Assembly: GCA_020536535.1 (NCBI GenBank)
Contig: JAHLWZ010000928.1
Span: 1 to 44,632 of the forward strand
Length of the DNA: 44,632 nt
Source: Pelomyxa schiedti
Lineage: Eukaryota > Protista > Evosea
Direction of reading: 5' to 3'
Shown piece after piece: positions 906 through 33,765 of this stretch. Made by a program: the position numbers and the translations under genes. Under the pieces are notes generated by a model, which worked only from the letters and a program-made list of their open reading frames with translations, was not told where the DNA came from and ran no database searches. Numbering within the stretch: position 1 is the first letter of the stretch; each line of letters starts with the position of its first letter.

Positions 906-1242
906 ATTCCAAAGTCACCCCCGAAATGAATTCACAATGTAAATCATCATTGCAATTAATTCAAACAAAAACGAACATTGACTTAGGGAAGACAAAAGTC
1001 ACTCCAGCACATGGTCCTCGGCCATGTAGTCGTCCCCAGACAGCCTCCGGTGATGTACAGGTTCGGTTTTGTTAGAGCCTAAGCTCAGGATACAGAAAGT
1101 ATCCTCTCTCTTTAAGAGATTAGAGATTTAAAAATATCGGGATGCAGATTGATGTGTGCCGGGAGACCTGACTCATCCCTTAAAAGCATACCCAACCGCA
1201 GTTCAAAAAACAAAACCAAGCCAACAAACAAGGGGCCGTGCC

Positions 1243-3369
1243 ATGGGAGACATTGGTAAATCCAGAAACCAAGAACACCAAGATCGTTCCCATCATCATC
1301 AGGAACCCACTAGCCGCAGCGTGATCGCGACCGCCCCCGCAAGATCCCGTAAGTCATCGCCTTCTCATCCCCAATGTTGGTGGCGGCCTTACCTTTCCCT
1401 GGGCGCCATCGAAGCCCGCCGTCGCGATCGCCGTCGCCGCACCTCCGCACCGCGACGACAAATCCTTCATTGCACCACGTCGCCAGCCCCGGCTCCTGCG
1501 TCGACGGCAGATGGCGTCGATCCCTTTATTTGTGATATTGACGTTTTGCCTGTGGCCGAGGAGGGAGCTGCAACGACTGAATCTACTACGCCGACGCCAA
1601 CGCGCACAGCGAGTACTGGAGATGGCCGGGATGAAATTGATGTTGTTGTGGGGCCGACGGCACCTGAATCGACGCGCACGACTACTACGTCAATTCCCGC
1701 AACTACGACTGGCGAAGCTGGAGGTGACGTGGAAATGAACGCGAAAACGGCATCGGAGCCGGCTCCGCAATATCTGGTGCAATCTTTGGTGGTGGAGGAG
1801 GAGAAGCCAGATTATGGGACTGAGGTGCCGCGTATGGTGTACTACCCCAAGTTCACGACTATTATCCACCGGAACCACCCAGATGACGTTTACTTTCCCA
1901 AGAGCATCAAGGTCCGTGAGTTCCTGAGTGCAAGTCATCAGTTCCTTGCTCTACTTATGTACGGGAGGCGTTCTACTTCTACTTCTACTTCTACTCCTAC
2001 TCCTACTTCTACTTCTACTTCTGTGACGTCATCACCAGCAACTGCGACTGAGGGGTGCGGTGTGCCAGCGCCATTATCATTCCCATCTAGTGGCATGAAT
2101 TTGGTGGCGAAACTGGTGTGGGAATACGCTTGTGTTGGAATGACAAGGAGATACTGCATCAAGGTGCCGGAGCGATGCAAAGCCGGTGCTGTTATGATCA
2201 CGTTTGGGCTGTCACCACTTGTTATGGGATTGACTGAGGGACCGAGGCGGTGGAACGGAGACAAGTGGATGCACCGCTTACTAGCACTCAACGAGAGCAG
2301 GGCCCTGATTGAATTCGGCACTCTTGACGACACCTGCTGGTTCAAAGTTGGGAGCATCACAGCCGGCGGTGATACTGCTCGTAGTTCTGCTGTTTTCCGT
2401 GCCGCTTCTCTTATTTGTAGTTCTGACGGTGATGATTATTGCTATGGTGATGCGCCTGGTGCGGCGTGTGAATCCAAGAAGGTCAAAAGGTTTATGCCCT
2501 CAGAGGATGGAATTTCCTTGGCTACTCAGAATAGAAAGTGGGCCGTGTTCTGTTCGGCGGATGGAGTGCTTACCATCGTGGACCTAGTTGGCCAACACTA
2601 TGACAAACAACAGAGCAACAGTATGGGCGAAGATTTAGACTCTGACCTATACTGTGTACGTGTTCCTGTTTCCCCGCCAGTGCCTGGCATGCGCTGCCGT
2701 GGATTGTTCCTCAGCAAAACAGAGCCGGATGCCGCTACACTTGCATTCCTCGAAAAACATCCGGTTGATGACAGCTGCATATTCGTTGCAGTGGACCTGG
2801 AGAAGACGTTTTCACTAAGGGTGTTTACTGTTTCTACATCAAGTAGCCCGCAGGTGTCTGGCGGTAACTGGGGGGCTTACGAGGTAACAGCTACTAAAGC
2901 CACAGGAGAACTATGTTTTATCTTTGGCAATACTCCTGATGTGGTGAATGGTGCTGATGCTGTTGAAGAACGCAGCGGTGGGAGTAACGACTTGAACAAC
3001 GCGAAATGCTTGATATTGAATCATGACGGTGCCGTGACACCTCTGAGCAAGTCACTGTTCTGTGTCTCCAAGCCGAACGGTTCATACTCAATCTGGGACT
3101 GCAACAACCTCACGAAGCCCGTTTGTTCAGAAGGCTCCAATCTACTGTCATCAGAGTTCGCGCGAGTTCGCGTTGTTGCAGAGAGCGGACTGCTATTTCA
3201 CGTCTACAAGGGACTCCACACCCAACATCTCATTCAGGTTACTTTTCCGTCATCCAACAGCTGTCAGCAACAAATTCCTGTTCTTTCTCTGGCACTCACC
3301 TTCTATGATGAAGCGGACGAATTCCGCCCTTTCTTTGAGGGAACTGCCTGCTGTTCATTCTTCTTGTAG
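1243..3369 (+). CDS. Intronless protein of a lineage-specific family (N-terminal helical motif plus predicted beta-rich C-terminal domain); paralogue of 30808 and 32386
   Basis: Single long ORF (track starts at GTG 1156, first ATG 1243). Shares QFLALLM, VAKLVWEY, VMITFGLSPL, NRKW, VAVDLEKTF, LSKSLFCVS and SIWDCNNLTKP blocks with the other two. Confidence 0.8.
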   Translation: MGDIGKSRNQEHQDRSHHHQEPTSRSVIATAPARSRKSSPSHPQCWWRPYLSLGAIEARRRDRRRRTSAPRRQILHCTTSPAPAPASTADGVDPFICDIDVLPVAEEGAATTESTTPTPTRTASTGDGRDEIDVVVGPTAPESTRTTTTSIPATTTGEAGGDVEMNAKTASEPAPQYLVQSLVVEEEKPDYGTEVPRMVYYPKFTTIIHRNHPDDVYFPKSIKVREFLSASHQFLALLMYGRRSTSTSTSTPTPTSTSTSVTSSPATATEGCGVPAPLSFPSSGMNLVAKLVWEYACVGMTRRYCIKVPERCKAGAVMITFGLSPLVMGLTEGPRRWNGDKWMHRLLALNESRALIEFGTLDDTCWFKVGSITAGGDTARSSAVFRAASLICSSDGDDYCYGDAPGAACESKKVKRFMPSEDGISLATQNRKWAVFCSADGVLTIVDLVGQHYDKQQSNSMGEDLDSDLYCVRVPVSPPVPGMRCRGLFLSKTEPDAATLAFLEKHPVDDSCIFVAVDLEKTFSLRVFTVSTSSSPQVSGGNWGAYEVTATKATGELCFIFGNTPDVVNGADAVEERSGGSNDLNNAKCLILNHDGAVTPLSKSLFCVSKPNGSYSIWDCNNLTKPVCSEGSNLLSSEFARVRVVAESGLLFHVYKGLHTQHLIQVTFPSSNSCQQQIPVLSLALTFYDEADEFRPFFEGTACCSFFL
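1972..2022 (+). repeat. (TCTACT)n hexamer microsatellite encoding STSTSTPTPTSTSTS
   Basis: Directly visible tandem repeat with a few T>C variants, inside the 1243-3369 ORF. Confidence 0.9.
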
Positions 3370-9994: not shown

Positions 9995-12093
9995 ATGGAC
10001 GAAACGGCACAAGGTGCCGTTGCAGCTCCCACAATGTCTTCTAACTGCACCCCCGCAACGGCAATGATAAGTTGCAGCTCTCATCCTTTGACGGGAGCTG
10101 TGGGACTCGACGTGGGTGTGTCGGTTGTTGGTCACGGCGATCTGTCGGCCAATGTCGGTGCGGCTGGCATCCCACCATCCAGTCTCGATGCGTTCCAGTC
10201 ATTCTCTGCCCACATCAAGAGCATCGTCGCAGTGCGCACCAGCCTACTTTTTTCTGTGGTGTCTGTTTTGGTCTGGGGGAAACGAATTATGGGGCAACTA
10301 ACGCACTAGACCAGGGACGTGAGATTCCCTGTGTTGACTATCTCAAGTTGCAAGTTGCTCTTGCCAATTTGTGGATGAAACTTTACCCCAACAATTGGGA
10401 ATACATTGATGATGTTATGAAGAATACTGCGGAGTTCCTTGCAGCCGTCAAGGACCCGTTCGTGCCTCATTCCATCCGCCTTTCCACCAAGTTTTCGTTT
10501 TCAGGCAAGAATTCCAACAGGAGCTGTGTGTGAATAAGATCACCAAATTGCTTTCTCTCCCAGTTGCCACATGTCGTGATATTCGGCAGGTAATTTTATC
10601 TCCTAAAAAAACCCTAAAGGCGTGATGAATGTTGTATGATTTCAACAATGAAAGGTCCTTGGACTTCAACATTTCAATGCTGTTTGTTCACACTTGCAAT
10701 TTGAACAACGCAAAGCCATTCATGTCAGCGTGCTTCGTGCTGTGCTGAGGTCATCAACGTGCATCATTAGAACAACTCAACAAGTTGGTACCTTACTGTC
10801 ATTTATCCCAACTCTTCTGATGAGTGACCCGAATGTTGACAATGAATCACACAACAAGGTTTTTAATTGCCCCTGTGAGTTGCCTTTGTTCATTTCTTCT
10901 CAAAAAGGAGCTCTTTTACGAGGAACAAAATCTTGTGGCAGCAACAATTCACATGTTTCAAAATGATGACCCAGAGATCCTTCTTGGCGTATGAACCCTA
11001 CAGGGAATTTATTCTTAAGGTTCCGCAAGATGTATCTCTGTGCACGAAAACTCTTTGGCCAATGGGACTCTGGACGATTTTCCTTCACTCTCCCACCCCT
11101 CATTTTCTCTGTTTTCAATATGCTTACCACTTTGAAGCAGACAAATGAGGTACGTAATGTAACACAGTGGAACCCATTAAATCAGCTCCACACAGGAGAG
11201 TTTCCAGAAGCTGCACAGGCGGCTGTTTGATTTTGAGAATCAAACGATCAAGGAACTCGGCACAAGGGGTTTTGTTGAACTTGCCCTCAAATTAAACTTG
11301 CAGGGGGCCCAAGTTGCTGCTGTGTGTAAGCAGGAGGCTTGTGTTTATGAATTCTGTTGCCAAGTATCTTTTCGCGAAGCCTTTTAGAGGGATTTTTGCA
11401 AGAGAACAAACTGAGCATCAATAGGCTTTCATTCTCTATGAGGAGGAGGTTACCAACAGTTCACAGCAAATAAAATTCGTTACACTTTTTGTCGGAACCT
11501 TGCACTCGATCCAATTTGAGCCAGAAAACAAGGAGATCCTTGCAGCCAAGGTCAATTTTACCCTCCCATGATAGCTGCTGTGCATTAACCGGCGTTTTCA
11601 CCTCAACAGATGGCTAGGTATTCCCTGAAGCTTCTTAAGAAACGCGATCAAGTCAGTGCGCTTTGCATTGTGTCACATCTCTTTGGGGGCAAAAACCAAA
11701 CAGATGGAGAAAACCGAACTGTTGAATGTCTCCAGAAGGCGCTTAGGATTGCTGATTCTCTGCCGGCAAGTTTGGAACTCCCAAAACACAACAAAACGCA
11801 CCACACAGACACTAACATCCCAAAAATAGCCGATGATGAACACGCCACTTCAAGTGGAGATTCTGAACTGGTACATGTACTTCTTCAAGAAGCACCATGA
11901 TTTAGTACCAGATCTCATTCAGAGGGTGAATGGGCTGATTGGTCTCATCAGTGCCACCATCACAACGCTCGAGCCAGATATCGCTGATTGTGCCGAGATT
12001 CAAACCACAATCAAGTTCTTCCAGAACACACTGGCATCAATAAAGCTGACGACACAGAGTTACTCAGGGGACTACACAATACACATCCCATAA
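9995..12093 (+). CDS. VPS35: Vps35 (retromer) homologue, C-terminal ~60% only; multi-exon
   Basis: Colinear Vps35 blocks: GIPPSSLDAFQSFS..., LKLQVALANLWMKLYPNNWEYIDDVM, ARKLFGQWDSGRFSFTLPPLIF, AFILYEEEVTNS, SLKLLKKRDQVSALCIVSHLF...RTVECLQKALRIAD, VEILNWYMYFF...IKFFQNTLASIK. Confidence 0.85.
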
Positions 12094-12699
12094 CTCGTTC
12101 CAAGGCCAATTACCACAAGTAAATTTGGTTCCAAGAGAACTTTGACAACAAACTTTTTTTGGAACAAGTGTTTTGGTAGGCGACTAAAAGCGGAAAGTCT
12201 AGACACCACGATTAAGAAAACAAGCTGGGAATTAGCATTTTGGAGCTAATGGAGTCCAATTGAGGTTCACATTGCTGAAAGATACTTCCAGTTGCCTGCT
12301 GAGAGTGGGGGTGGTCTGCCAGCAGTGTGGCTTTCTGTTTGTCAGCTGCTTTAGCTGCAACAGAACTCTGTGCCTCTTGGGTGGAGGGCCTCCTCTGTGG
12401 TGGAGAACTAGTGCAAGCTGTTGAATTTCACTGGCCCCCAACCAGACGGACCCTACTGTACTGTTGGCAACACTTTGCTTTACCCCTGATGATCTGACTT
12501 ATATCTGTAACAAGTGAATTGTGGGTGGTCACAGGATGCACTGTGACAGAAAGAACAGTGTTCAACAATGTACTCCCCTTATTTACTTGGAGATAGGCAC
12601 CAGAATAGCTCTAACCAAGGAGGATTGGTTCATTGGGTCAAAAGGGAAGCTCCCTGTCACAAACAGGTTAAATTCTTTTTCTCTGCTATCAGAGCATAC

Positions 12700-13829
12700 T
12701 CCATGGCGTTGGGCACCCAGCACAAGGCGGCGGACTATAATTACTAATACTATCACGAAGCACAATACGGAAACAAGCAGTGCTGTAACGTACAACTTTG
12801 TGTGGAGCTGGCAGTTAAATCAGGAATGTAAGGCATGAATTAGTAACACATACCGACTTAGTCATTGCTTCCAGAAATTGTTTCTGTGCAGATTCCTGGA
12901 GTTGAGGTTAGGTGGTAAGTCGCAGTGAGGTTTGGGTGAGAGACTACAACTTGGGTGTTGCGTGGAAGCAATACGAACAGTGCTGTACCGGTGGCAAAAC
13001 TTGTGATTGCCGTTATAGACACGAAGTACTCATCTGGATTGAGTGAAGAGGAGTCAACATCAAACGCAATCTTGTTGATGCCGTCTTTTCTATTGGACTC
13101 GACAACAGTGGTGGTTGCTTGTATCCCGACAAAGTCACGAGGATTTCCCTTCTCAGAGTATGATGATGGGTGTATCGAAAGCGTGACTGCACTGCCCACA
13201 TTGAGATTTGTAATGGCTATGATTTCGAATGCGTCACCAACGCGGTTTCTATCTCCAATTTCCAGAATCCTAATGACCGGCACCTCAACCAAGAATAGAA
13301 GCTTTGTGTACAAATCATCCACATATGGACTATTCAGAGCCCGAAGTAAAGATATCATGGCTTCTTCCGCGGTGCCATCATTAAATCCCACAAGTCCGCC
13401 TTTGGTTTCCTCGTCGAATTGCCCATTGAGTCCCGCATATTGCACGACAATCGCATATTTACCAGCGGTGGCACTCTCAGGTACCTGCAACCGAAAGCTG
13501 AAAGACACACCGTCGCCATGCATCTCAATGTTCCTCTCGACTTGGCGGTAGATGGCCCCAGGCCTGCATCTAAACACAAACACAGCAATTCTGCATGCAT
13601 GCAATGGCATTTGTTGGTGCGAATCTATCCTCCCAGTAATCCAGATACCTTGGCCCTGGACAACAGTGGGTTGGTTAATCGTCGCCGTCACGTACTCGTT
13701 TGGTCGAGCATCCACAGCCCCCGTGAAACCACGAAAAGAAGGAGGAGACCCTGCTGGACTACAGGTGACTAATAACACGGCAACCAACGCCGCGACGTGG
13801 GGCAGAAGGCCTCTGGATTTTCGCAACAT
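12700..13829 (-). CDS. Secreted/type-I membrane protein built from a Methanomicrobiales S-layer-glycoprotein-like domain, spliced to a TM exon (3' end may extend to about 12200)
   Basis: ATG 13829, signal peptide, intronless exon to 12975 containing YVTATINQPTVVQG, GKYAIVVQY, LLRALNSPYVDDLYTKLLFLVEVPVIRI, GDAFEIIAITNLNVG, GINKIAFDVDSSSLNPDEYFV and ATGTALF. Predicted introns 12974-12896 (GTATTG...CTAAC...CCAG) and 12853-12808 (GTATGT...GCCAG) keep phase 0 and join exons 12895-12854 (ESAQKQFLEAMTKS) and 12807-12700 (TM YVTALLVSVLCFVIVLVIIV followed by RR). Confidence 0.75.
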
Positions 13830-14136: not shown

Positions 14137-17100
14137 ATGTTCACCACAGTTTCGGCTGCTTCTTCTCATAACCAGGCACGAAGAACTTTTCACGAGTCTT
14201 CTCAAGTGATGGCATCCGCAACGTCAGGTGCAGCGTCAGTCATTTCAAGAGTCACTGATGTACCACCGGTGTCGCAGCCGCAACCAGGGGTGTCACTCGT
14301 ATGCGGCCCACAATTCCCTCCGAGGACGATTCCCGCGTTCAGTGCACCGCTGGGACTGGCCGTTGCAAAAGTAGTCGCCGAGAACGCCAACTCGGACTTT
14401 GTGGTGTTTGCCAACAAGAGGATGACGTTCGCAGAAACGAAACGTTGCGTGTTGTAATTGTGGGTTGTGGGTCCGTCTTTTTTTGTATTGAACCTGTGGA
14501 ACCTTGATTTCATTTTATTTGTTTGAATTGTTGACTTAATGTTCATTAGAATTGATGGACAAAATTACTGTGGCTTTGCTGGCCAAAATGGGATTATCCA
14601 AGGGGGACCCTGTAGCCACTTTTCTTCCAAATGTACCTGAGAACCCAGCTATTCTACTTGCCACCATTTGTGCTTCCCTTATTTTCTCGCCATTGAATCC
14701 TGGGTACATGGCTGAACAGGTTTCATTATATATTGCCTCCGTTGGTGTTCAGTCCCTCTCAGGTGATAGCCTATGTGAGTCGAATCAAACCAAAAATTAT
14801 TTTCGCACATAGCAGTAACGCTGGAAGGATTCGTGACGTTGTTGATCCTGTTATACCTATTGTTGTTCTAGGCACAACGCTTCCAGATGGTCCTTATGGT
14901 CTGTTATAGCTTAACTTTAATAGTTTTCTCAAGGTCCAAATGTCCTGTCATTTGATTCTCTTATTGGTAACTTGCCGCAAGTTGAGCCGGGCTTCATAAT
15001 GAAGGTGCACCAATCGGCCTCACCAAATGATGTTGTAGCTTATGCCTCAACTGGTGGTTCAACCTCCGGTCCTAAGGTATGTCATCGTACAAAGGATATC
15101 TTGAAAACCTGAAATTTAGTTGTGCATCTGGACCCTGAACGTTATACGTCATTCAATTATTGTAAGCTTTCAGGGCAAGGCACGTATAATGCTGCCTCTT
15201 CCCTTCTATGCTAGTACTGGCACTTTGACGCAACTGTTCACATTTTTTTGTGGTGGGACTCTTGTTTGCACGGAGACATTCGACTTGCACGAATGGCTTG
15301 AACTAGCATCACGGGAGCATTGCAATTCACTGACTGTAGCCCCAAGCCTTCTCCTAGAACTTCTCGCAGGAGATTACTCGTATGATCTCAGCAATGTGAA
15401 ATATGTGATTAGTACTGGCGCCTCTGCTTCTCAAGACATGCTTTCTCGTGCCCAAAAGAAATTCGATCTTGCCGCAGCTTTCTCTGTCTACGGAATGACA
15501 GAAACAGCTGGCAGAGTAGCTCGCTCAATTGTGCCATTCCAAGTTTGGCCATATATGAAAGTAAGAATTGCTGACACAACAAGTGGGACTGTTGTTGCCA
15601 CTGGCTTGTCTGGAGAGATACAAGTGCAAGGGCCAACTGTATTTGCAGGTTATCTCGGGGAACCAGAATTAACTGCAAGGGCTTTTACAAGTGATGGGTG
15701 GCTAAAGACTGGTGATATAGGCCACTTTGATGATAAGATGTTTTTGCACATCACAGGAAGAATCAAGGAAATGATCAACAGAGGTGGAATGAAAGTATGG
15801 CCTGCTGGTATATGAGCCTCTTTCTCAAATCGAAATTTATTAACCTTCCATTTCTGAAAAGATCTTGAAGCCGTGTTGGCTACACATCCAGGCATACAAG
15901 AAGCTGCAGTTATTGGGATCCCTGATATCCTCATGGGGGAATCTGTCGTTGCATTTGTCATTCGCAACCCTCTCCATACCCCTCCTGTGACCGTGCATGA
16001 TGTTAGAAACTTTATGGCGGCACAAGTTGTTGCGTTCTGTGTGCCACAGTACGTGTTCTTTGTTGAATCTTTTGAAAGAAACTCGGCTGGGAAAACCTAC
16101 AAACCAGCCCTTTGTTCCATGGCACCGAAGCTGGTGGAGGACTACTGGACTAGCGTCAACGTGGCACCTGACCTGACACCTTCTGAGTGATCACATCCTC
16201 TACTGTTTGCCAGTTTTAACTTATCCTCATAGACCACTCGCCAAGGAAATAGCCAATATTTGGCACCTTGGAATAGGGATACCTGTTCATGCAATTAGTA
16301 TTGATAGCAACTTTTTTGAGCTGGGAGGGAACAGTATAGTGGCAGGGAGGACACATGCCGTTATACGTAAGGAGTTTCCTGAGACCCCTGGGAACATACT
16401 TGTTCTATGTCCCACGATTAGGCAAATTATGAGGTTTGGGAATCAGTTCATTACTGGTAAATAACCTTGAATCCTCAGGTACCTCGAATCAAAGGACACA
16501 AGTGGAGATAATACTAACTGGACAGTAGAATCTGCTCTTGAAACAACTACTGTAGCCGCTACTTTACCCCCACCAGCCCCTCCAGTGTCAACAACTTCAC
16601 GTGTATTTCTTACGGGATCGAATGGCTTCCTTGGCGTGCATGTTCTTCATGCTATTCTCTCTTACATGCCCAACGTAAGAGTAGTATGTGGGATCAGGGC
16701 TGCCAACAAAGGGGAAGCATATCATAAATTGGAGAGTGCCTTTTCTCTCAACAAATCTCTGGATCCATCACTTTTATCACGTGTGGAGGTTATTGTAATT
16801 GACTTGTCCCTCCCATTACTGGGGCTCACACCAGAAGAGCTTGGGACACTCTCCAATAGTATTGATGGTGTGTTCCATTGCGCAGCAGCAGTCTCATGGG
16901 TCACACCGTACCGAGTTTTATCAAGACATAATATCTTCGGAACAAAGCAGGTTGCATTACGCAACCAATATAGATTAATCTAATTCATTGCGCAGATCCT
17001 CTATCTGGCCAGCCTATCATCTAAAGGTCCACTTCCAGTCCATTTCGTTAGTACCTATGAGGTGCGTCTTGATCACGATGAGAATGCATCTCTTGGGGAG

Positions 17101-18026
17101 GTACCCCCTGAGATTCCAATTCCGTACTACATCACATGCGATTTCTTTTTATTTTTTAACCAGTAGAAGATATATTCAGTCTAAATGGGTGTCCGAAAAG
17201 CTGGTCAAAGAAGCTGGGCAACGCGGTGTTCCTTTTGTTATCTATCGGCCAGGAGCTGTTTCTGGTATGGTGAAGTCCTCCTTTCTTTTCACTAATGATT
17301 GTGTAGGTCACTCAGTGAGTGGAGTTACCAACTCTGACGATTTCTACATGAGATTTCTCAAGGGTTGTATCGAATTGGGAGGTGCTCCTGAATCTGGAAC
17401 ATTCTTCCCATTGTGCCCTGTTGACCAAGTTTCTAAGAGCCATAAAACACCAAAACTGTAACCAAAATCGCAGGTCGCCAAGACCATAGTTGATATCATG
17501 TTTGAACCCACATCAACTGGGAAGACTTTCAACATCACGCCTTCAGAAGACACACCTTACTCCTTGCTGTGGGACGTTGCCCGTGAAGCTGGCTATCAAA
17601 TAAGGTAACGAATTGCCATTTTCTCTAAATTGTTAAAGGTACATACAAGACATTTTTTTGACTGGTTTTTTTTTTTTTTTGCACAGGTCACTGAGGCCAC
17701 AAGAATGGGGCACTCTGCTGGCATCCGCCGGTCCCACCAATAGCATGTCGGCCCTATCGTTCCTATTCCAAAGACCCAAGGAAGCAACCGCAACAACCAA
17801 ACCCACCAAATGCCCCCGCTCCAACCTGGATTCCTTGCTCCCGCCATCACCAGAGCACAACATGACACCCTCTCGCGAGTGCATTCGCCGGTACATTCAG
17901 GTTGCAATACAAGCGGGATTCCTGCCCCCAGTTCCCTCAGAATCAGCATCATCAACACAACAGGAAACAACAACAAGTAACAACCAAACAACAACATTAT
18001 TCTCTAGAACACATGTGTGGTTTTGA
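14137..18026 (+). CDS. NRPS-like A-T-R enzyme (carboxylic-acid-reductase-like: adenylation, phosphopantetheine carrier, thioester reductase); multi-exon
   Basis: A domain: FLPNVPE...PLNPGY, YASTGGSTSGPK, YGMTET, GEIQVQGPTVFAGY, DGWLKTGDIG...GRIKEMINRGG, RNSAGK. T domain: DSNFFELGGNSIV. R domain: VFLTGSNGFLG, FHCAAAVSW, YIQSKWVSEKL, IYRPG. Confidence 0.9.
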
Positions 18027-30460: not shown

Positions 30461-30810
30461 GCCACATTAAGAGAGTTTCTTGTAGTTGCACTTTTTCTTC
30501 TTTATTCTCAAACCGCGCCTCCAGTCCCCAACAGTGAAGTTCAGTGCCTGGCCAATCCTGTTGGACTCCAATCCACGAAAGCAGCCAAGTGGCTCATCAA
30601 CCAACACGTCACACTTGTCAACAACGCAATTCTATTCAAGCTTATAACGCGGGGTCAAGGGAACTGTGCAGAGTGGTACATCAACAAGTTCCACATGAGG
30701 CACCTTCTTCATCGCTCTTTCTCACATCGCACCTGGTTAAAGAGAGGTTCCTTCCACTGGTGTGTAAATAATTGCCATGAAGGGGTTCCCATTTCTACTG
30801 ACCACAGATG
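30461..30810 (+). pseudogene. Relic of an ankyrin-like/helical repeat gene
   Basis: Open frame without an upstream ATG: STKAAKWLINQHVTLVNNAILFKLITRGQGNCAEWYINKF. The preceding sequence in the same frame contains stops. Confidence 0.3.
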
Positions 30811-32160
30811 ACATCTTGCACGCCATCATTTCTTCAACTCCTGAATCTCGTAGCGAGGAAAATGATGAGTGTCACAGCACAGTCACAATTCATGGCTCTG
30901 TTGATGGCATCGCACCCTCGTTGCGGTGCGAATTCTACTATGTTTCTGTACTCATCATCACGAAACTTGGTTGTTTGCGACACCACCATCACCACATCGA
31001 CGGTTTCGCCATCTCCCGAGACGACCACGACAGTTCTTGTTGGCAAGGGGAACCGCGATTATGGGATGGAGCGTGGTTTCGTGGTGTCGGTTGCGCGCGT
31101 TGTGTGGTCCTACGTCATCGAATTTGGGCCCGTGGTGAAAATCATTGCGACTGCCCGAGGATCGAACTTCCACGTGTGCGTGTCACCTCTGCTCATGTCA
31201 TTGATCAGGCCGCCGGAATTCCCAGACTACGTGAATGGGGTATGGCTGGATCCCAACAGGATTCTAGTGACGAAAACCAAGTACTCCGAAGAGTGTGGAT
31301 TGGTGCATGAGGTTCGCATCAAAAGCCTCACGCCCAAGTCGAAGGTGTGCCTGTTGAGGCAAACGAGGGACTCTGTCCAGTGGTGTGCAAACAAAAAGTG
31401 GATTGTGCTGCATGGAAAAAGTTCTGGTGATACCAGTGGGTCTGATGTGACCATCCTGGCAACTCCCAAACCAGGGCAGCATCATGAAACCACCGCTGTG
31501 ACAGTGCCGATTGGTGGTTCTCTGATGAATAGAGGCCGTCCCGCTGGTGTCAGGATGTGGTTTGGGCTGTTCGATCTCAAGGTTTTTTTTATGGCCCTTA
31601 CTTGGGTGCACCATGAAAGGGATGCAATGTGGTTGGTGGTAGATGTTGAGAAGACCTATTCATCACAGAGCCTCTGTGTTATATCTTCAACAACATGGGA
31701 ATTTACTGGTGATTATCTTGACAAAGCCTTTACACTCAAATTACGAGAAGGGGCGTTGTGCATGATCTTCCTGGCCAATTTCTATTTTACCAACGATGCT
31801 GTCTATCGAGTCATGGAAAAGTCTGGAAACTGGGAGAAACTAAGGACAAAGATCCCGGCGCATTACTCTCTTTTAGTATCACAGCTCAACCAGTCCCTGT
31901 TCTGTATTTCCACAACCTCTGCAAGTTCTTTTTCTGAAATCTGGGACTGCAACAACCTGGCAGACCCAATCAAGGTAATCACTTTCGGTGATGATGGAGT
32001 CACTGGAATAGTTGGCGCAACAGCCTGCGGGTTTCTGATACAGTTACACGGATCCTATTTAAGAATGATTGATGCTTCCTCAGGCTGTTGTGTTCTCCAA
32101 ATGACACAGGACAGCGAGTATGAACTAAGGTTCTATGGAGTTTCTTCTGTTGCAGATTAG
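30808..32160 (+). CDS. Intronless protein of the HPRCG-motif family (450 aa)
   Basis: Uninterrupted ORF with QFMALLMASHPRCG, VARVVWSYV, VSPLLMSL, NKKW, VVDVEKTYSS, VSQLNQSLFCIS and EIWDCNNLADP. Confidence 0.85.
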   Translation: MTSCTPSFLQLLNLVARKMMSVTAQSQFMALLMASHPRCGANSTMFLYSSSRNLVVCDTTITTSTVSPSPETTTTVLVGKGNRDYGMERGFVVSVARVVWSYVIEFGPVVKIIATARGSNFHVCVSPLLMSLIRPPEFPDYVNGVWLDPNRILVTKTKYSEECGLVHEVRIKSLTPKSKVCLLRQTRDSVQWCANKKWIVLHGKSSGDTSGSDVTILATPKPGQHHETTAVTVPIGGSLMNRGRPAGVRMWFGLFDLKVFFMALTWVHHERDAMWLVVDVEKTYSSQSLCVISSTTWEFTGDYLDKAFTLKLREGALCMIFLANFYFTNDAVYRVMEKSGNWEKLRTKIPAHYSLLVSQLNQSLFCISTTSASSFSEIWDCNNLADPIKVITFGDDGVTGIVGATACGFLIQLHGSYLRMIDASSGCCVLQMTQDSEYELRFYGVSSVAD

Positions 32161-32385: not shown

Positions 32386-33765
32386 ATGATCTTCATTAGA
32401 ATTTTAATATCTTTTCAGAACGTTGGGAGCTCCAACAACAATTGCGCTCGGCAACAGGCAAGCAGCTGCTCGAGCACCACGGCACCACGCCGTGCGAGTC
32501 GTAACGGTGACTGGCACCGCGAGCAAGCCCCCACCACGAGGGACCAAGTTGGGGCAATGGCCGCGGGGTGCCACCCGAGGTGCGGCGCGCGGTGCGCCCT
32601 GCTGGCAATGGATTGTGGGACTACGGCTGGTGGCGATTGCCGCTGTTGGGCGCCGGTGGCGAGGCTGGTGTGGCGTTGGATCTGGGACAACTCGAGGTTC
32701 CACTGTGTATCGTGGGAGGTGAAGTGGATGCTGGGGCGCGAGTGCCAGAAAGTGATGATCACGTTCGGTGTCTCGCCGCTGCTGACGCTGACGCACGAAA
32801 TGAGGTGGTGGGCGGGGGGAAAGAGGGAGGCGCTTCTTGGCGCGAACCAGGACTACTTGGTGCGGGAGAGAAGGCCACGCGGTCCCAAACCGACTGCCTT
32901 AATCCTCGAGGACAGGGCCACTGGTCATAAGGTCCGGTTGGGCAGGTTCAAGGATGGAGTGACGAACGGGAAATGGTTGGTGGCGTGTGAAGAGACCAGT
33001 ACGAATATGGTTGTTTTTAAGCTTCCGAGGAAGAACCAAATGGCCGCGACATCTTCAACAACAATCAAGAATCCGACCGTTGTGCCGGTGGACACTGTGG
33101 GGTATAAAACTGATTTTTGGATTCCTGAATTTCGGAGTATCCATGAAGATTACGTTGTGCTTTGCTGCTATGAGAAATCACGCTGCCATGAGAATCCCAC
33201 TACTTATGGATTTCTTTTGGTCAATCTTGCTTCAACATGTGCATCAAAGAAGCTGGTGGTGTTGAGTTCAAATGTTTTCAGACTGAAGGATTGGCCTCCC
33301 AACCTTGATGACTTCCAACCATTAGGTGCCTCCTATTTTTCTGTGCACAAAGAAACCATCTCACATGCTTTAGTCAGCTTGCAAGCACCTACCTTTTACG
33401 CCATTGATTTCATCACTGTGGAACAGGGTTCTGGCAACAAATTCCAACCAACATTCCAAGGGTGCACAGCTCCACACCGTGTGTCACAGCTGAACTGGTC
33501 ACAGTTCTGTGCCTTCAGGGATAACACCGATTCATACGAAGTGTGGGATGTCAGGGATGCAATGAAGCCAGTGAGGACACAGAAATTACTGAGTGGTTTC
33601 ATCCATCACGCTTTTGTTGGAGGAGGTTTGCTGTTCCAAATGAGTGAATCCCTCGATGAGATGCACGTGACTGAGGAGTCCTCTGGTGATCACGTCGTCA
33701 CCTTCGGCCTTTTTGCACCAATAGGGTTCTTCTGGTTCCACTTTTCCTTCCCTCTCAGCTCCTGA
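32386..33765 (+). CDS. Intronless protein of the HPRCG-motif family (up to 459 aa), tandem paralogue
   Basis: Uninterrupted ORF with QVGAMAAGCHPRCG, VARLVWRWIW, VMITFGVSPLL, NGKW, LVNLASTCAS, VSQLNWSQFCAF, EVWDVRDAMKP and GGGLLFQM. True start may lie downstream. Confidence 0.85.
   Translation: MIFIRILISFQNVGSSNNNCARQQASSCSSTTAPRRASRNGDWHREQAPTTRDQVGAMAAGCHPRCGARCALLAMDCGTTAGGDCRCWAPVARLVWRWIWDNSRFHCVSWEVKWMLGRECQKVMITFGVSPLLTLTHEMRWWAGGKREALLGANQDYLVRERRPRGPKPTALILEDRATGHKVRLGRFKDGVTNGKWLVACEETSTNMVVFKLPRKNQMAATSSTTIKNPTVVPVDTVGYKTDFWIPEFRSIHEDYVVLCCYEKSRCHENPTTYGFLLVNLASTCASKKLVVLSSNVFRLKDWPPNLDDFQPLGASYFSVHKETISHALVSLQAPTFYAIDFITVEQGSGNKFQPTFQGCTAPHRVSQLNWSQFCAFRDNTDSYEVWDVRDAMKPVRTQKLLSGFIHHAFVGGGLLFQMSESLDEMHVTEESSGDHVVTFGLFAPIGFFWFHFSFPLSS

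What the first reader, a model, noticed from the sequence alone, without database searches (positions are those of the whole stretch)
12975..13829. Methanogen S-layer-like domain encoded in an amoeba nuclear gene: candidate archaeal symbiont-to-host transfer
Seen: an intronless exon of about 285 codons between two intron-rich eukaryotic genes. Knowledge: its blocks (YVTATINQPTVVQGQGIWITG; GKYAIVVQYAGLNGQFD; AEEAMISLLRALNSPYVDDLYTKLLFLVEVPVIRILEIGDRNRVGDAFEIIAITNL; KIAFDVDSSSLNPDEYFV; ATGTALF) follow, in order, the consensus I recall for the C-terminal domains of the Methanomicrobiales S-layer glycoprotein (MEMAR_RS02690-type; ...AINxPNVDDTYTKLQFLVEEPxIxIDPIGDxxVGDKFTITGTTNL...SFDVDxSTFKPDEYIV...ATGTALFNV). 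I know no eukaryotic members. Pelomyxa carries a Methanoregula-related endosymbiont. Inference: the host took the surface-lattice gene of a methanogen and may display it in the secretory pathway or symbiont vacuole, for tethering, lattice co-assembly, mimicry or self-recognition of symbionts.
Basis: partly seen in the sequence, partly recalled or inferred. Interest (0 to 1): 0.95.

Follow-up and report, generated by a model that had tools for sequence, protein, structure and literature searches.

The report
Archaeal S-layer module gene in amoeba
The anaerobic amoeba Pelomyxa schiedti carries, between ordinary nuclear genes, a gene for a small surface protein that came from methanogenic archaea of the order that includes its own obligate symbiont; it is unreported, but the exact donor and its function are still open.

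Summary
The 323-codon ORF (12858-13829, minus strand) matches NCBIfam S_layer_MEMAR at E=7e-39, covering only profile positions 508-782 of 819. The window is P. schiedti contig JAHLWZ010000928.1, and the gene is annotated Pelo_14302 (hypothetical, 350 aa). It lies between multi-exon Vps35 and a carboxylate-reductase-like gene. Its GC3 is host-like and the model has three short GT-AG introns. It is at most about 42% identical to any archaeal protein and about 32% to the symbiont's own S-layer protein, so it is not a chimera. All named relatives are Methanomicrobiales, mostly Methanoregula.

The interpretation needs revising in three ways:
- **Donor gene:** Methanomicrobiales also have short paralogues with the same build (signal peptide, two Ig-like domains, plain TM helix). 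Trees, signature residues and a shared loop deletion favour such a paralogue over a truncated lattice gene.
- **Donor lineage:** AU tests reject neither a symbiont-clade origin nor a position outside Methanoregulaceae.
- **Topology:** the protein is secretory, while the methanogens are published as lying free in the cytosol, not in vacuoles.

The most likely product is a domesticated type I surface protein. A role in docking onto S-layers is speculative. No transcript evidence was available.

The parts
12630..13829 (-). Whole annotated gene Pelo_14302 (KAH3744296.1), 350 aa, four exons
   Evidence: P0001 is 100% identical to the ORF up to ...LLPRNTQ. Rebuilding the exons reproduces P0001 exactly.
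12951..13829 (-). Exon 1, 293 codons: signal peptide plus the two-domain S-layer-type module
   Evidence: GC is 49.1% and GC3 49.5%.
13746..13829 (-). Signal-peptide-like N-terminus (aa 1-28): a basic n-region, a hydrophobic core and a small-residue c-region (PAGS)
   Evidence: Read from the sequence. Kyte-Doolittle windows starting at residues 5-9 exceed 1.7. No dedicated signal-peptide predictor was available.
13395..13697 (-). Ig-like beta-sandwich domain 1 (aa 45-145)
   Evidence: AlphaFold2 model, strands E18-103 of the modelled segment, pLDDT 60-92. It matches HMM positions from 508 onward.
12951..13394 (-). Helical linker plus Ig-like beta-sandwich domain 2 (aa 146-293), the best conserved part
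   Evidence: pLDDT is 84-95. The tblastx HSPs pile up at 12.9-13.4 kb. The best DNA match to any archaeal locus, about 75% over 110 nt, lies here.
12896..12950 (-). Intron 1 (55 nt, GT...CTAAC...CAG, GC 51%); the least secure intron
   Evidence: Its in-frame read-through aligns without gaps to the archaeal Thr/Val/Pro-rich linker, so it looks like relic linker coding sequence.
12854..12895 (-). Exon 2 (14 codons, stalk)
12808..12853 (-). Intron 2 (46 nt, GTATGT...TTAAC...CAG, GC 37%)
12700..12807 (-). Exon 3: a 21-residue transmembrane helix (aa 312-332) followed by RR and a short tail
   Evidence: The Kyte-Doolittle peak is 3.35. The PGF-CTERM HMM gives no hit here, while a Methanoregula control tail scores 5e-08.
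12654..12699 (-). Intron 3 (46 nt, GTATGC...TTAAC...CAG, GC 37%)
12630..12653 (-). Exon 4 (last 7 codons and the stop)
10064..12093 (+). Flanking host gene: Vps35 (retromer, eukaryote-specific), multi-exon
   Evidence: Pfam PF03635 matches on three separate exon ORFs. Gene range.
14209..18026 (+). Flanking host gene: AMP-binding / PP-binding / NAD_binding_4 (carboxylate-reductase-like), multi-exon

Best explanation
Pelo_14302 is a real nuclear gene of Pelomyxa schiedti, acquired by lateral transfer from a methanogen of the order Methanomicrobiales, most probably a member of Methanoregulaceae.

Shown here:
- It is homologous to the anchor-proximal two-domain module of the S_layer_MEMAR family.
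- It sits between eukaryotic genes.
- Its base composition is host-like.
- It is strongly diverged from every sampled archaeal copy, including the symbiont's.

Inferred, about 55% likely: the donor gene was not the roughly 900-aa lattice protein. It was one of the short archaeal paralogues that already have a signal peptide, the two Ig-like domains, a linker and a plain C-terminal transmembrane helix. Such a gene needs no archaeosortase, so it could work unchanged in a eukaryotic ER.

Inferred from sequence and the annotated model: the product enters the secretory pathway and is a type I membrane protein. Its two Ig-like domains face the outside or an organelle lumen, and an 18-residue tail faces the cytosol. 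Two or three introns were gained in the former linker and anchor region.

Speculative, about 20-25% likely: by position, this module corresponds to the domains that make contacts between hexamers in the Haloferax csg lattice. The amoeba protein may therefore act as a surface or phagosomal adhesin that docks onto methanogen S-layers when cells are taken up. If not, it is a generic Ig-like surface or coat protein.
For: Homology:
- NF041431 matches at E=7e-39.
- 25 columns are invariant across 77 aligned sequences including Pelomyxa.
- The AlphaFold2 model has pLDDT 81.6 and shows two beta-sandwiches. Its top PDB match is the Haloferax S-layer protein 7PTP at E 1.6e-9 and TMq 0.50.

Donor order:
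- All 80 best genome loci are Methanomicrobiales, mostly Methanoregula.

Nuclear residence:
- The contig is JAHLWZ010000928.1, and the gene is flanked by Vps35 and other multi-exon genes.
- GC3 is 49.5%, against 38-60% for host exons and 59-66% for archaeal genes.
- The host genome is 46.5% GC and the symbiont 54.8%.
- Archaeal similarity is confined to 12.8-13.7 kb.
- The best DNA match to any archaeal locus is about 75% over 110 nt.

Short-paralogue origin:
- P0079/P0159 (a Methanoregula MAG, in prokaryotic context L081), P0137 (archaeal context L084), P0035, P0081 and P0165 share the architecture.
- Pelomyxa + P0035 + P0137 form a clade at 90/89 in the careful tree.
- Pelomyxa and P0035 are collinear from domain 1 to the TM helix at E 5e-28, and both have the shortened loop.
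- Pelomyxa keeps 65 of 119 conserved columns. Short paralogues keep 48-87 and long proteins 92-119.
- It shares up to 9 derived residues with short paralogues and at most 3 with any long protein.

Topology:
- Signal-peptide and TM hydropathy peaks are present, and there is no PGF-CTERM.

Lattice analogy:
- In csg, D4-D6 make the inter-hexamer contacts, and a helical insert in the penultimate domain forms the trimeric junction (PMC8640222).
Against: - No transcript or read-level evidence could be examined. The introns rest on the deposited Augustus/PASA/EVM model and on canonical signals.
- Intron 1 has coding-like GC, and its read-through resembles the archaeal linker. The true product might be the unspliced, anchorless 323-aa protein.
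- The short-paralogue grouping involves long branches. It drops to SH-aLRT 67 without P0137.
- The AU test does not reject a symbiont-clade origin (p 0.33).
- P0035's organism is unknown.
- Only 6.8 kb of the symbiont genome was seen, so a short paralogue in the symbiont itself could not be checked.
- Only 55% of the family's conserved columns are kept, so compatibility with any present-day lattice is doubtful.
- Resident methanogens are cytosolic, which separates them from a secretory ectodomain.
- Only a single genome carries the gene, so no dN/dS could be computed.
Confidence: 0.8

Rival explanations
1. The main S-layer lattice gene of the present symbiont lineage (Ca. Methanoregula pelomyxae) was transferred and truncated to its C-terminal third. 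It now acts on the symbionts through tethering, co-assembly or mimicry in a symbiont compartment.
For: - In a tree of long proteins only, Pelomyxa attaches next to L071 (the symbiont) and L001, with a 90/92 branch separating these three from the other rows.
- AU tests do not reject Pelomyxa + L071 (p 0.43) or Pelomyxa + L071 + L001 (p 0.33).
- The motif VEVPVIRI is shared with Methanoregula long proteins.
- The host depends obligately on this methanogen (PMC10579272).
Against: - Pelomyxa is only about 32% identical to the symbiont's protein.
- Once short paralogues are included, the best trees place Pelomyxa with them, outside a starred clade that holds all the long Methanoregula proteins.
- Holding Pelomyxa with the symbiont clade costs 9.3 lnL units.
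- Architecture, length, the Q-x-x-G-x-N signature and the loop deletion all match the short class.
- The symbionts are free in the cytosol, not in vacuoles.
Confidence: 0.15
2. The gene is transcribed without removal of 'intron 1'. The product is then the 323-aa ORF: a soluble, secreted two-Ig-domain protein with a relic linker tail and no membrane anchor.
For: - Intron 1 has 51% GC, against 37% for introns 2 and 3, and a weak 5' site (GTTGTA).
- Its in-frame translation aligns without gaps to archaeal T/V/P linkers.
- The read-through adds about 3 bits to the HMM score (133.9 against 131).
Against: - The deposited model, built with transcript-aware tools, splices this intron.
- The intron has a CTAAC branch-like motif 12 nt before its AG.
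- Splicing yields a clean TM helix plus RR, at the position where the archaeal anchor sits.
- Otherwise two well-formed introns would lie in a 3' UTR.
Confidence: 0.2
3. The gene is a decaying, non-functional relic of an old transfer that is merely annotated as a gene.
For: - The branch is very long, and only 65 of 119 conserved columns are retained.
- No orthologue was found in any other eukaryote, and no close relative in metagenomes.
- No expression data were found.
Against: - A 293-codon frame has stayed open despite about 60% amino-acid divergence.
- All 25 family-invariant columns are kept.
- The model folds confidently into two intact sandwiches.
- The signal peptide and anchor are intact.
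- Its divergence is within the range of functional-looking archaeal short paralogues.
Confidence: 0.08
4. The region is an assembly chimera or contamination. Symbiont or environmental archaeal DNA was joined into a host contig during MDA and SPAdes single-cell assembly.
For: The assembly came from MDA-amplified single cells that contain abundant Methanoregula. MDA is known to make chimeras (plus general knowledge).
Against: - It would need two precise junctions inside a 44.6-kb host contig.
- There is no DNA-level identity to the symbiont's locus or to any of about 80 archaeal loci beyond about 75% over 110 nt.
- Protein identity is at most 42%.
- No archaeal flanking sequence is present.
- GC and GC3 are host-like.
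- The N-terminal two thirds of an S-layer gene are absent, and a start codon and signal peptide sit directly on the module.
- The 3' end has a canonical intron structure.
Confidence: 0.02

Closest known systems
MEMAR_RS02690-family S-layer glycoprotein of Methanomicrobiales (NCBIfam NF041431), for example the symbiont's own copy in CP121470 (L071)
   Same: The last two Ig-like domains are homologous (profile 508-782, E=7e-39), with 25 invariant columns shared. The module sits directly before a linker and a membrane anchor.
   Different: Pelomyxa lacks the N-terminal 500 or so residues (profile 1-507) and the PGF-CTERM archaeosortase signal. It scores 131-134 bits against a 600-bit cut-off, while the symbiont's protein scores 986. 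It keeps only 55% of the highly conserved columns, has a deleted inter-domain loop, has no N-X-S/T sequon, is encoded in a eukaryotic nucleus, and has introns.
Unnamed short paralogues of Methanomicrobiales with a signal peptide, two domains and a TM helix (P0079/MCX6683032.1 from Methanoregula sp.; P0137; P0081; P0165; P0035)
   Same: Same length class (320-420 aa). Same order of parts: signal peptide, two domains, linker, plain TM helix with a basic tail. Gly in the Q-x-x-G-x-N motif. A similar degree of divergence from the lattice proteins. Pelomyxa and P0035 both have a shortened loop. They group together in the best trees (90/89).
   Different: Pairwise identity is only 24-34%. The grouping is not statistically secure. 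The archaeal ones are intronless genes in compact prokaryotic neighbourhoods. Their function is also unknown.
Haloferax volcanii S-layer glycoprotein csg (PDB 7PTP; PMC8640222)
   Same: It is the top structural match, with tandem Ig-like sandwiches in an archaeal surface protein. By position, the Pelomyxa module corresponds to the anchor-proximal domains, which in csg mediate contacts between hexamers.
   Different: Sequence identity is 14% and there is no profile-level sequence match. The equivalence to particular csg domains (D5-D6) is an analogy by position, not an alignment result.
Prokaryote-to-eukaryote lateral gene transfers in anaerobic protists (for example NIF and hydrogenosomal enzymes of Archamoebae)
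   Same: A single prokaryotic gene is embedded among host genes, with ameliorated composition and acquired introns.
   Different: Known cases are overwhelmingly metabolic enzymes from bacteria. This one is a structural cell-surface module from an archaeon, in the family that contains the host's obligate endosymbiont.

Membership tests
NF041431 S_layer_MEMAR (equivalog) | Whole-protein score above the curated cut-off of 600 bits | tested here: not met
   133.9 bits for the ORF and 131 bits for the spliced protein. The symbiont's protein scores 986.4.
NF041431 S_layer_MEMAR (equivalog) | N-terminal two thirds of the protein (profile positions 1-507) | tested here: not met
   The match starts at profile position 508, directly after the signal peptide. 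No archaeal-like sequence lies upstream of 13.7 kb.
NF041431 S_layer_MEMAR (equivalog) | C-terminal two-domain module (profile positions about 508-782) | tested here: met
   E=7e-39, alignments A1 and A2, and a two-sandwich model.
NF041431 S_layer_MEMAR (equivalog) | PGF-CTERM archaeosortase sorting signal | tested here: not met
   TIGR04126 gives no hit at E<=10 on residues 285-350. Control tails score 5e-08 and 4.9e-06.
NF041431 S_layer_MEMAR (equivalog) | Forms the cell's two-dimensional surface lattice | not testable with these tools
   This needs microscopy or biochemistry. The absence of the N-terminal domains makes autonomous lattice formation unlikely (inference).
Short signal peptide / two-domain / TM paralogues of Methanomicrobiales | Architecture and length: signal peptide directly on the module, a linker, a plain TM helix, 320-420 aa | tested here: met
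Short signal peptide / two-domain / TM paralogues of Methanomicrobiales | Phylogenetic grouping with short paralogues rather than lattice proteins | tested here: inconclusive
   Support is 90/89 with P0035 + P0137 and 67 without P0137. The AU test does not reject the alternative (p 0.33).
Short signal peptide / two-domain / TM paralogues of Methanomicrobiales | Signature states: Gly in Q-x-x-G-x-N where lattice proteins have QHPMQN, and a reduced inter-domain loop | tested here: met
   See the alignment block. Not every short paralogue has the signature; P0079 and P0165 have the long-type motif.
Bona fide prokaryote-to-eukaryote LGT | Physically embedded between eukaryote-specific genes on one contig | tested here: met
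   Vps35 lies on one side. A multi-exon reductase-like gene and a ZGRF1-like helicase lie on the other.
Bona fide prokaryote-to-eukaryote LGT | Host-like composition and no DNA-level identity to a co-sequenced prokaryote | tested here: met
Bona fide prokaryote-to-eukaryote LGT | Spliceosomal introns confirmed by transcripts | not testable with these tools
   The deposited model has three canonical GT-AG introns of 46-55 nt. No RNA-seq reads were accessible, and nothing was found in the papers or their supplements.
Bona fide prokaryote-to-eukaryote LGT | Homologues restricted to one prokaryotic group, with no vertical eukaryotic family | tested here: met
   All named relatives are Methanomicrobiales. 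Only one eukaryotic protein appears among the hits.
Endosymbiont-to-host gene transfer (EGT-like) | Donor is the resident symbiont's lineage | tested here: inconclusive
   AU p is 0.43 and 0.33 for the symbiont groupings and 0.58 for placement outside Methanoregulaceae.
Endosymbiont-to-host gene transfer (EGT-like) | Product is delivered to, or acts on, the symbiont | not testable with these tools
   The predicted secretory topology set against cytosolic methanogens (PMC10579272) argues against steady-state contact.

The most novel reading that the evidence does not exclude
The amoeba uses a protein domesticated from a methanogen's own envelope toolkit as a host-encoded receptor. Its ectodomain docks onto the inter-hexamer interfaces of Methanoregula S-layers at the plasma membrane or phagosome. 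This would let the host recognise, capture or spare its obligate hydrogen-scavenging partner. It would be the first molecular partner-recognition device known in any methanogen-protist symbiosis.
Probability: 0.15. Interest if true: 0.9.

Novelty: new variant of a known kind. Interest (0 to 1): 0.62.

Why it matters
Methanogen-protist symbioses are widespread and ecologically important, yet no host gene of methanogen origin, and no molecule that mediates partner contact, has been described for them. This is a verifiable case of an archaeal cell-envelope module fixed in the nucleus of an amoeba that dies without its methanogen.

Even if the donor was prey rather than the symbiont, three points stand:
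- It is the first eukaryotic member of this S-layer family.
- It is an unusual non-metabolic transfer from an archaeon to a eukaryote.
- It shows how an archaeal surface protein with a signal peptide and a plain TM helix can slot directly into the eukaryotic secretory pathway, with possible intron formation in its former linker.

It also gives an immediately testable candidate for host-methanogen recognition. Finally, it draws attention to an unstudied class of short S-layer-module paralogues in Methanomicrobiales.

Tried and rejected
- **Pfam on the ORF:** only a sub-threshold Big_3 hit.
- **PDB by sequence:** nothing with the single protein or with the family profile.
- **PGF-CTERM in the spliced tail:** absent. 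The idea that the TM exon descends from the archaeal anchor therefore rests only on its position and the RR motif, with no detectable similarity.
- **Resolving the donor by phylogeny:** three trees and three AU tests. None rejects either the symbiont clade or a position outside Methanoregulaceae.
- **P0035's genome:** no DNA is held for its contig. P0035 is itself an orphan, and a metagenome scan found nothing.
- **Orthologues in JGI metagenomes:** none.
- **Archaeal-virus copies of the module in IMG/VR:** none.
- **Profile search with the short-paralogue alignment:** no new named members.
- **Mentions of the gene, S-layer or LGT in the two Pelomyxa papers, their supplements and the wider library:** none.
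- **Benchmarking intron signals on a Vps35 intron by eye:** I could not reconcile the reading frames, so I dropped that comparison. Only the gene-range-minus-CDS totals (515 nt for Vps35, 641 nt for the reductase-like gene) indicate that host introns are short.
- **N-glycosylation sequons:** zero in Pelomyxa, but also zero in P0002 and P0035, so this is uninformative.
Full report
**1. The observation**

An in-frame TAA directly precedes the ATG at 13829.

Pfam gives nothing above threshold, and no PDB sequence matches. NCBIfam NF041431, the 'MEMAR_RS02690 family S-layer glycoprotein', matches at E=7e-39 (133.9 bits). ORF residues 45-311 align to profile positions 508-782 of 819.

An exhaustive HMMER search of 1.84 billion representative proteins found 274 relatives at E<=1e-3 and 95 at E<=1e-10. 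Most are 800-1100 aa long, with the match near their C-terminus.

**2. Where the window comes from, and the gene model**

The window is the 44,632-bp contig JAHLWZ010000928.1 of the Pelomyxa schiedti assembly GCA_020536535.1. The gene is annotated as hypothetical protein Pelo_14302 (KAH3744296.1, 350 aa).

The deposited protein equals the ORF up to ...LLPRNTQ and then continues through three short GT-AG introns. Rebuilding the exons reproduces it exactly:

| Part | Coordinates | Notes |
|---|---|---|
| Exon 1 | 13829-12951 | 293 codons |
| Intron 1 | 12950-12896 | 55 nt |
| Exon 2 | 12895-12854 | 14 codons |
| Intron 2 | 12853-12808 | 46 nt |
| Exon 3 | 12807-12700 | TM helix |
| Intron 3 | 12699-12654 | 46 nt |
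| Exon 4 | 12653-12630 | last 7 codons and stop |

The product has these parts:
- a signal-peptide-like N-terminus (aa 1-28);
- the two-domain module (aa 45-293);
- a short stalk;
- a 21-residue hydrophobic helix (aa 312-332; Kyte-Doolittle peak 3.35);
- RR and an 18-residue tail.

That is the build of a type I membrane protein.

**3. It is embedded in host DNA and is not an artefact**

- Upstream on the other strand lies a multi-exon Vps35 gene (retromer, eukaryote-specific). Downstream lies a multi-exon AMP-binding/PP-binding/NAD_binding_4 gene, and then a ZGRF1-like helicase.
- tblastx of 8-19 kb against all fetched archaeal loci puts essentially all HSPs at 12.8-13.7 kb. No archaeal neighbour genes or upstream S-layer domains came along.
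- GC is 49.1% and GC3 49.5%. That is inside the range of host exons on the contig (GC3 38-60%) and below the archaeal genes (GC3 59-66%).
- The host genome is 46.5% GC and the symbiont 54.8%.
- The best nucleotide match to any of about 80 archaeal loci is about 75% over 110 nt, in the most conserved peptide stretch.
- The assembly was made from MDA-amplified single cells, so chimeras are a fair worry. A chimera would need two junctions. It would also carry near-identical symbiont DNA, which is not the case.

**4. Who the relatives are**

A scan of one genome per species (GTDB r232) found 259 relatives. The best 80 are all Methanomicrobiales, overwhelmingly Methanoregula/Methanoregulaceae MAGs, plus a few Methanomicrobiaceae. 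Two short contigs binned elsewhere nest among Methanoregula and are evidently mis-binned.

Locus L071 is CP121470, the chromosome of Ca. Methanoregula pelomyxae. This is the amoeba's own obligate methanogen (accession from PMC10579272). Its gene is a complete family member (986 bits, PGF-CTERM present) but is only about 32% identical to Pelo_14302.

**5. Donor resolution**

- **Long proteins only** (77 rows, LG+C20 PMSF). Pelomyxa has a saturated branch. It attaches beside L001 and the symbiont's L071, with a 90/92 branch setting these three apart. The AU test accepts Pelomyxa + L071 (p 0.43). It equally accepts Pelomyxa placed with the Methanomicrobiaceae-like clade, outside Methanoregulaceae (p 0.58; that tree is even 1.9 lnL units better).
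- **Short paralogues.** Methanomicrobiales also encode short proteins of 320-420 aa with the same build as Pelo_14302: a signal peptide, the two domains, a linker and a plain C-terminal TM helix that is not PGF-CTERM.
  - P0079/P0159 is from a Methanoregula MAG. Its near-identical cluster-mate P0157 lies in a compact prokaryotic neighbourhood (L081).
  - P0137 lies beside archaeal ribosomal, RNase P and proteasome genes (L084).
  - The others are P0081, P0165 and P0035.
- **Trees with the short proteins included.** Pelomyxa groups with P0035 and P0137, at SH-aLRT 90 in a 134-row quick tree and 90/89 in a 70-row careful tree. It falls outside a starred clade that holds all the long Methanoregula proteins, including the symbiont's. 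Without P0137, the Pelomyxa + P0035 pair persists but only weakly (67). Forcing Pelomyxa into the symbiont clade costs 9.3 lnL units but is not rejected (p 0.33).
- **Evidence independent of the trees** points the same way.
  - Pelomyxa and P0035 are collinear from domain 1 to the TM helix (E 5e-28), and both lack most of the inter-domain loop.
  - Pelomyxa has Gly in the Q-x-x-G-x-N motif, like most short paralogues, where the lattice proteins have QHPMQN.
  - It keeps 65 of the 119 columns that are at least 90% conserved in the lattice proteins. Short paralogues keep 48-87 and lattice proteins 92-119.
  - It shares up to 9 derived residues with short paralogues and at most 3 with any lattice protein.

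My reading is that the donor order is secure and the family is probably Methanoregulaceae. A short paralogue is more likely as the donor gene than a truncated lattice gene, at about 55% against 15-20%. The symbiont lineage as donor remains possible but is not demonstrated. Whether CP121470 itself has such a short paralogue could not be checked, because only 6.8 kb of that genome was retrievable.

**6. Structure**

AlphaFold2 with the 77-row alignment gave mean pLDDT 81.6 and pTM 0.73. The model has two beta-sandwich domains joined by a helical segment.

The best PDB match is the Haloferax volcanii S-layer glycoprotein csg (7PTP_A, E 1.6e-9, TMq 0.50). All other matches are generic tandem Ig domains with TMq 0.2-0.3.

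In csg, the anchor-proximal domains D4-D6 make the contacts between hexamers. A helical insertion in the penultimate domain forms the trimeric junction, and D1-D2 form the pore hub (PMC8640222). By position only, the Pelomyxa module corresponds to the junction and anchor-proximal part. It lacks anything that could form a hub, so it should not build a lattice on its own. It might still bind one. That is inference.

**7. The 3' end**

The PGF-CTERM model finds nothing in the Pelomyxa tail, while control tails score 5e-08 and 4.9e-06.

Introns 2 and 3 look like ordinary introns: 37% GC, GTATGT/GTATGC at the 5' end and TTAAC...CAG at the 3' end. Intron 1 differs:
- It is 51% GC and starts GTTGTA.
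- Read in the exon-1 frame, it aligns without gaps to the archaeal Thr/Val/Pro-rich linker.

The TM exon begins 143 nt after the end of the module. That is about where the archaeal anchor would lie, but in a different frame. Either part of the old linker was turned into an intron, or intron 1 is not spliced and the product is a soluble 323-aa secreted protein. I give the second option about 20%. Only RNA-seq can decide.

**8. Function**

- **Shown:** an intact 293-codon frame despite about 60% amino-acid divergence; all 25 family-invariant columns kept; and a confidently folded ectodomain.
- **Inferred:** secretory targeting and a type I topology.

PMC10579272 reports that the methanogens lie free in the cytosol, enriched around the nuclei. 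Only the clostridial symbiont sits in vesicles.

Contact could occur only outside the cell or in a phagosome. This is why I favour, weakly, a role in recognition or uptake over co-assembly. A generic surface-coat role is the default alternative.

**9. Novelty**

Neither Pelomyxa paper, nor their supplements, nor the wider library mentions this gene, an S-layer-type gene in a eukaryote, or a methanogen-to-host transfer of this kind.

No second eukaryotic member appeared in any search, although most metagenomic hits are unnamed. Lateral transfer into anaerobic protists is a known phenomenon. An archaeal envelope module from the family that contains the host's obligate symbiont is a new variant of it.

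**10. Verdict**

Interest is substantial but tempered. The donor is unresolved, there is no expression evidence, only one genome carries the gene, and the predicted topology does not fit the symbionts' location.

Noticed in passing
P0035 (ENA sample ERZ27247916, 1778-bp contig; no locus DNA): This is an orphan 323-aa protein with the same build as Pelo_14302: a signal peptide, two domains, a Ser/Thr-rich linker and a TM helix. It also has the shortened inter-domain loop. It is Pelomyxa's nearest neighbour by topology, but its organism is unknown. It could be an archaeal short paralogue or a copy in another host.
   Followed up: partly
L081:6001-7047, L084:5001-6263; proteins P0079, P0081, P0137, P0165, P0106, P0110, P0115, P0133, P0156: Methanomicrobiales encode an undescribed class of short proteins that carry only the anchor-proximal two-domain module of the S-layer protein. 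Some have plain TM anchors, some lipobox-like N-termini (LSGC/AGC), and some no anchor at all. Their role is unknown; they might be accessory proteins of the S-layer.
   Followed up: partly
L014 (JALOBQ010000131.1, binned as Omnitrophota) and L047 (DAONFE010000099.1, binned as Cryosericum): Two short contigs in bacterial MAGs carry Methanoregula-type S-layer genes that nest inside Methanoregula clades with strong support. These are most likely mis-binned contigs.
   Followed up: partly
L040/L055 (OY970361.1), L053/L059 (OY969564.1), L001/L056 (CAXXCP01), L067:1138 and L067:4120: Several Methanoregulaceae genomes hold two full-length S-layer paralogues at distant sites. One Methanomicrobium MAG has two copies in tandem.
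   Followed up: no
window 14209-18026 (+): The neighbouring gene encodes a 1058-aa AMP-binding / PP-binding / NAD_binding_4 protein. This is a carboxylate-reductase or aminoadipate-reductase-like architecture, split into many exons. Its origin (vertical or an older bacterial transfer) was not examined.
   Followed up: no
window 1156-3369 (+), 30808-32160 (+), 32386-33765 (+): These are unusually long uninterrupted ORFs (737, 450 and 459 aa) with no Pfam match. Their GC is somewhat raised (0.49-0.53), in a genome that averages about 7.5 introns per gene. They may be orphan or lineage-specific genes.
   Followed up: partly
window 12896-12950 (-): The sequence annotated as intron 1 still reads, in the frame of exon 1, like the archaeal Thr/Val/Pro-rich linker. 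This is a possible example of coding sequence turned into an intron after a transfer.
   Followed up: partly
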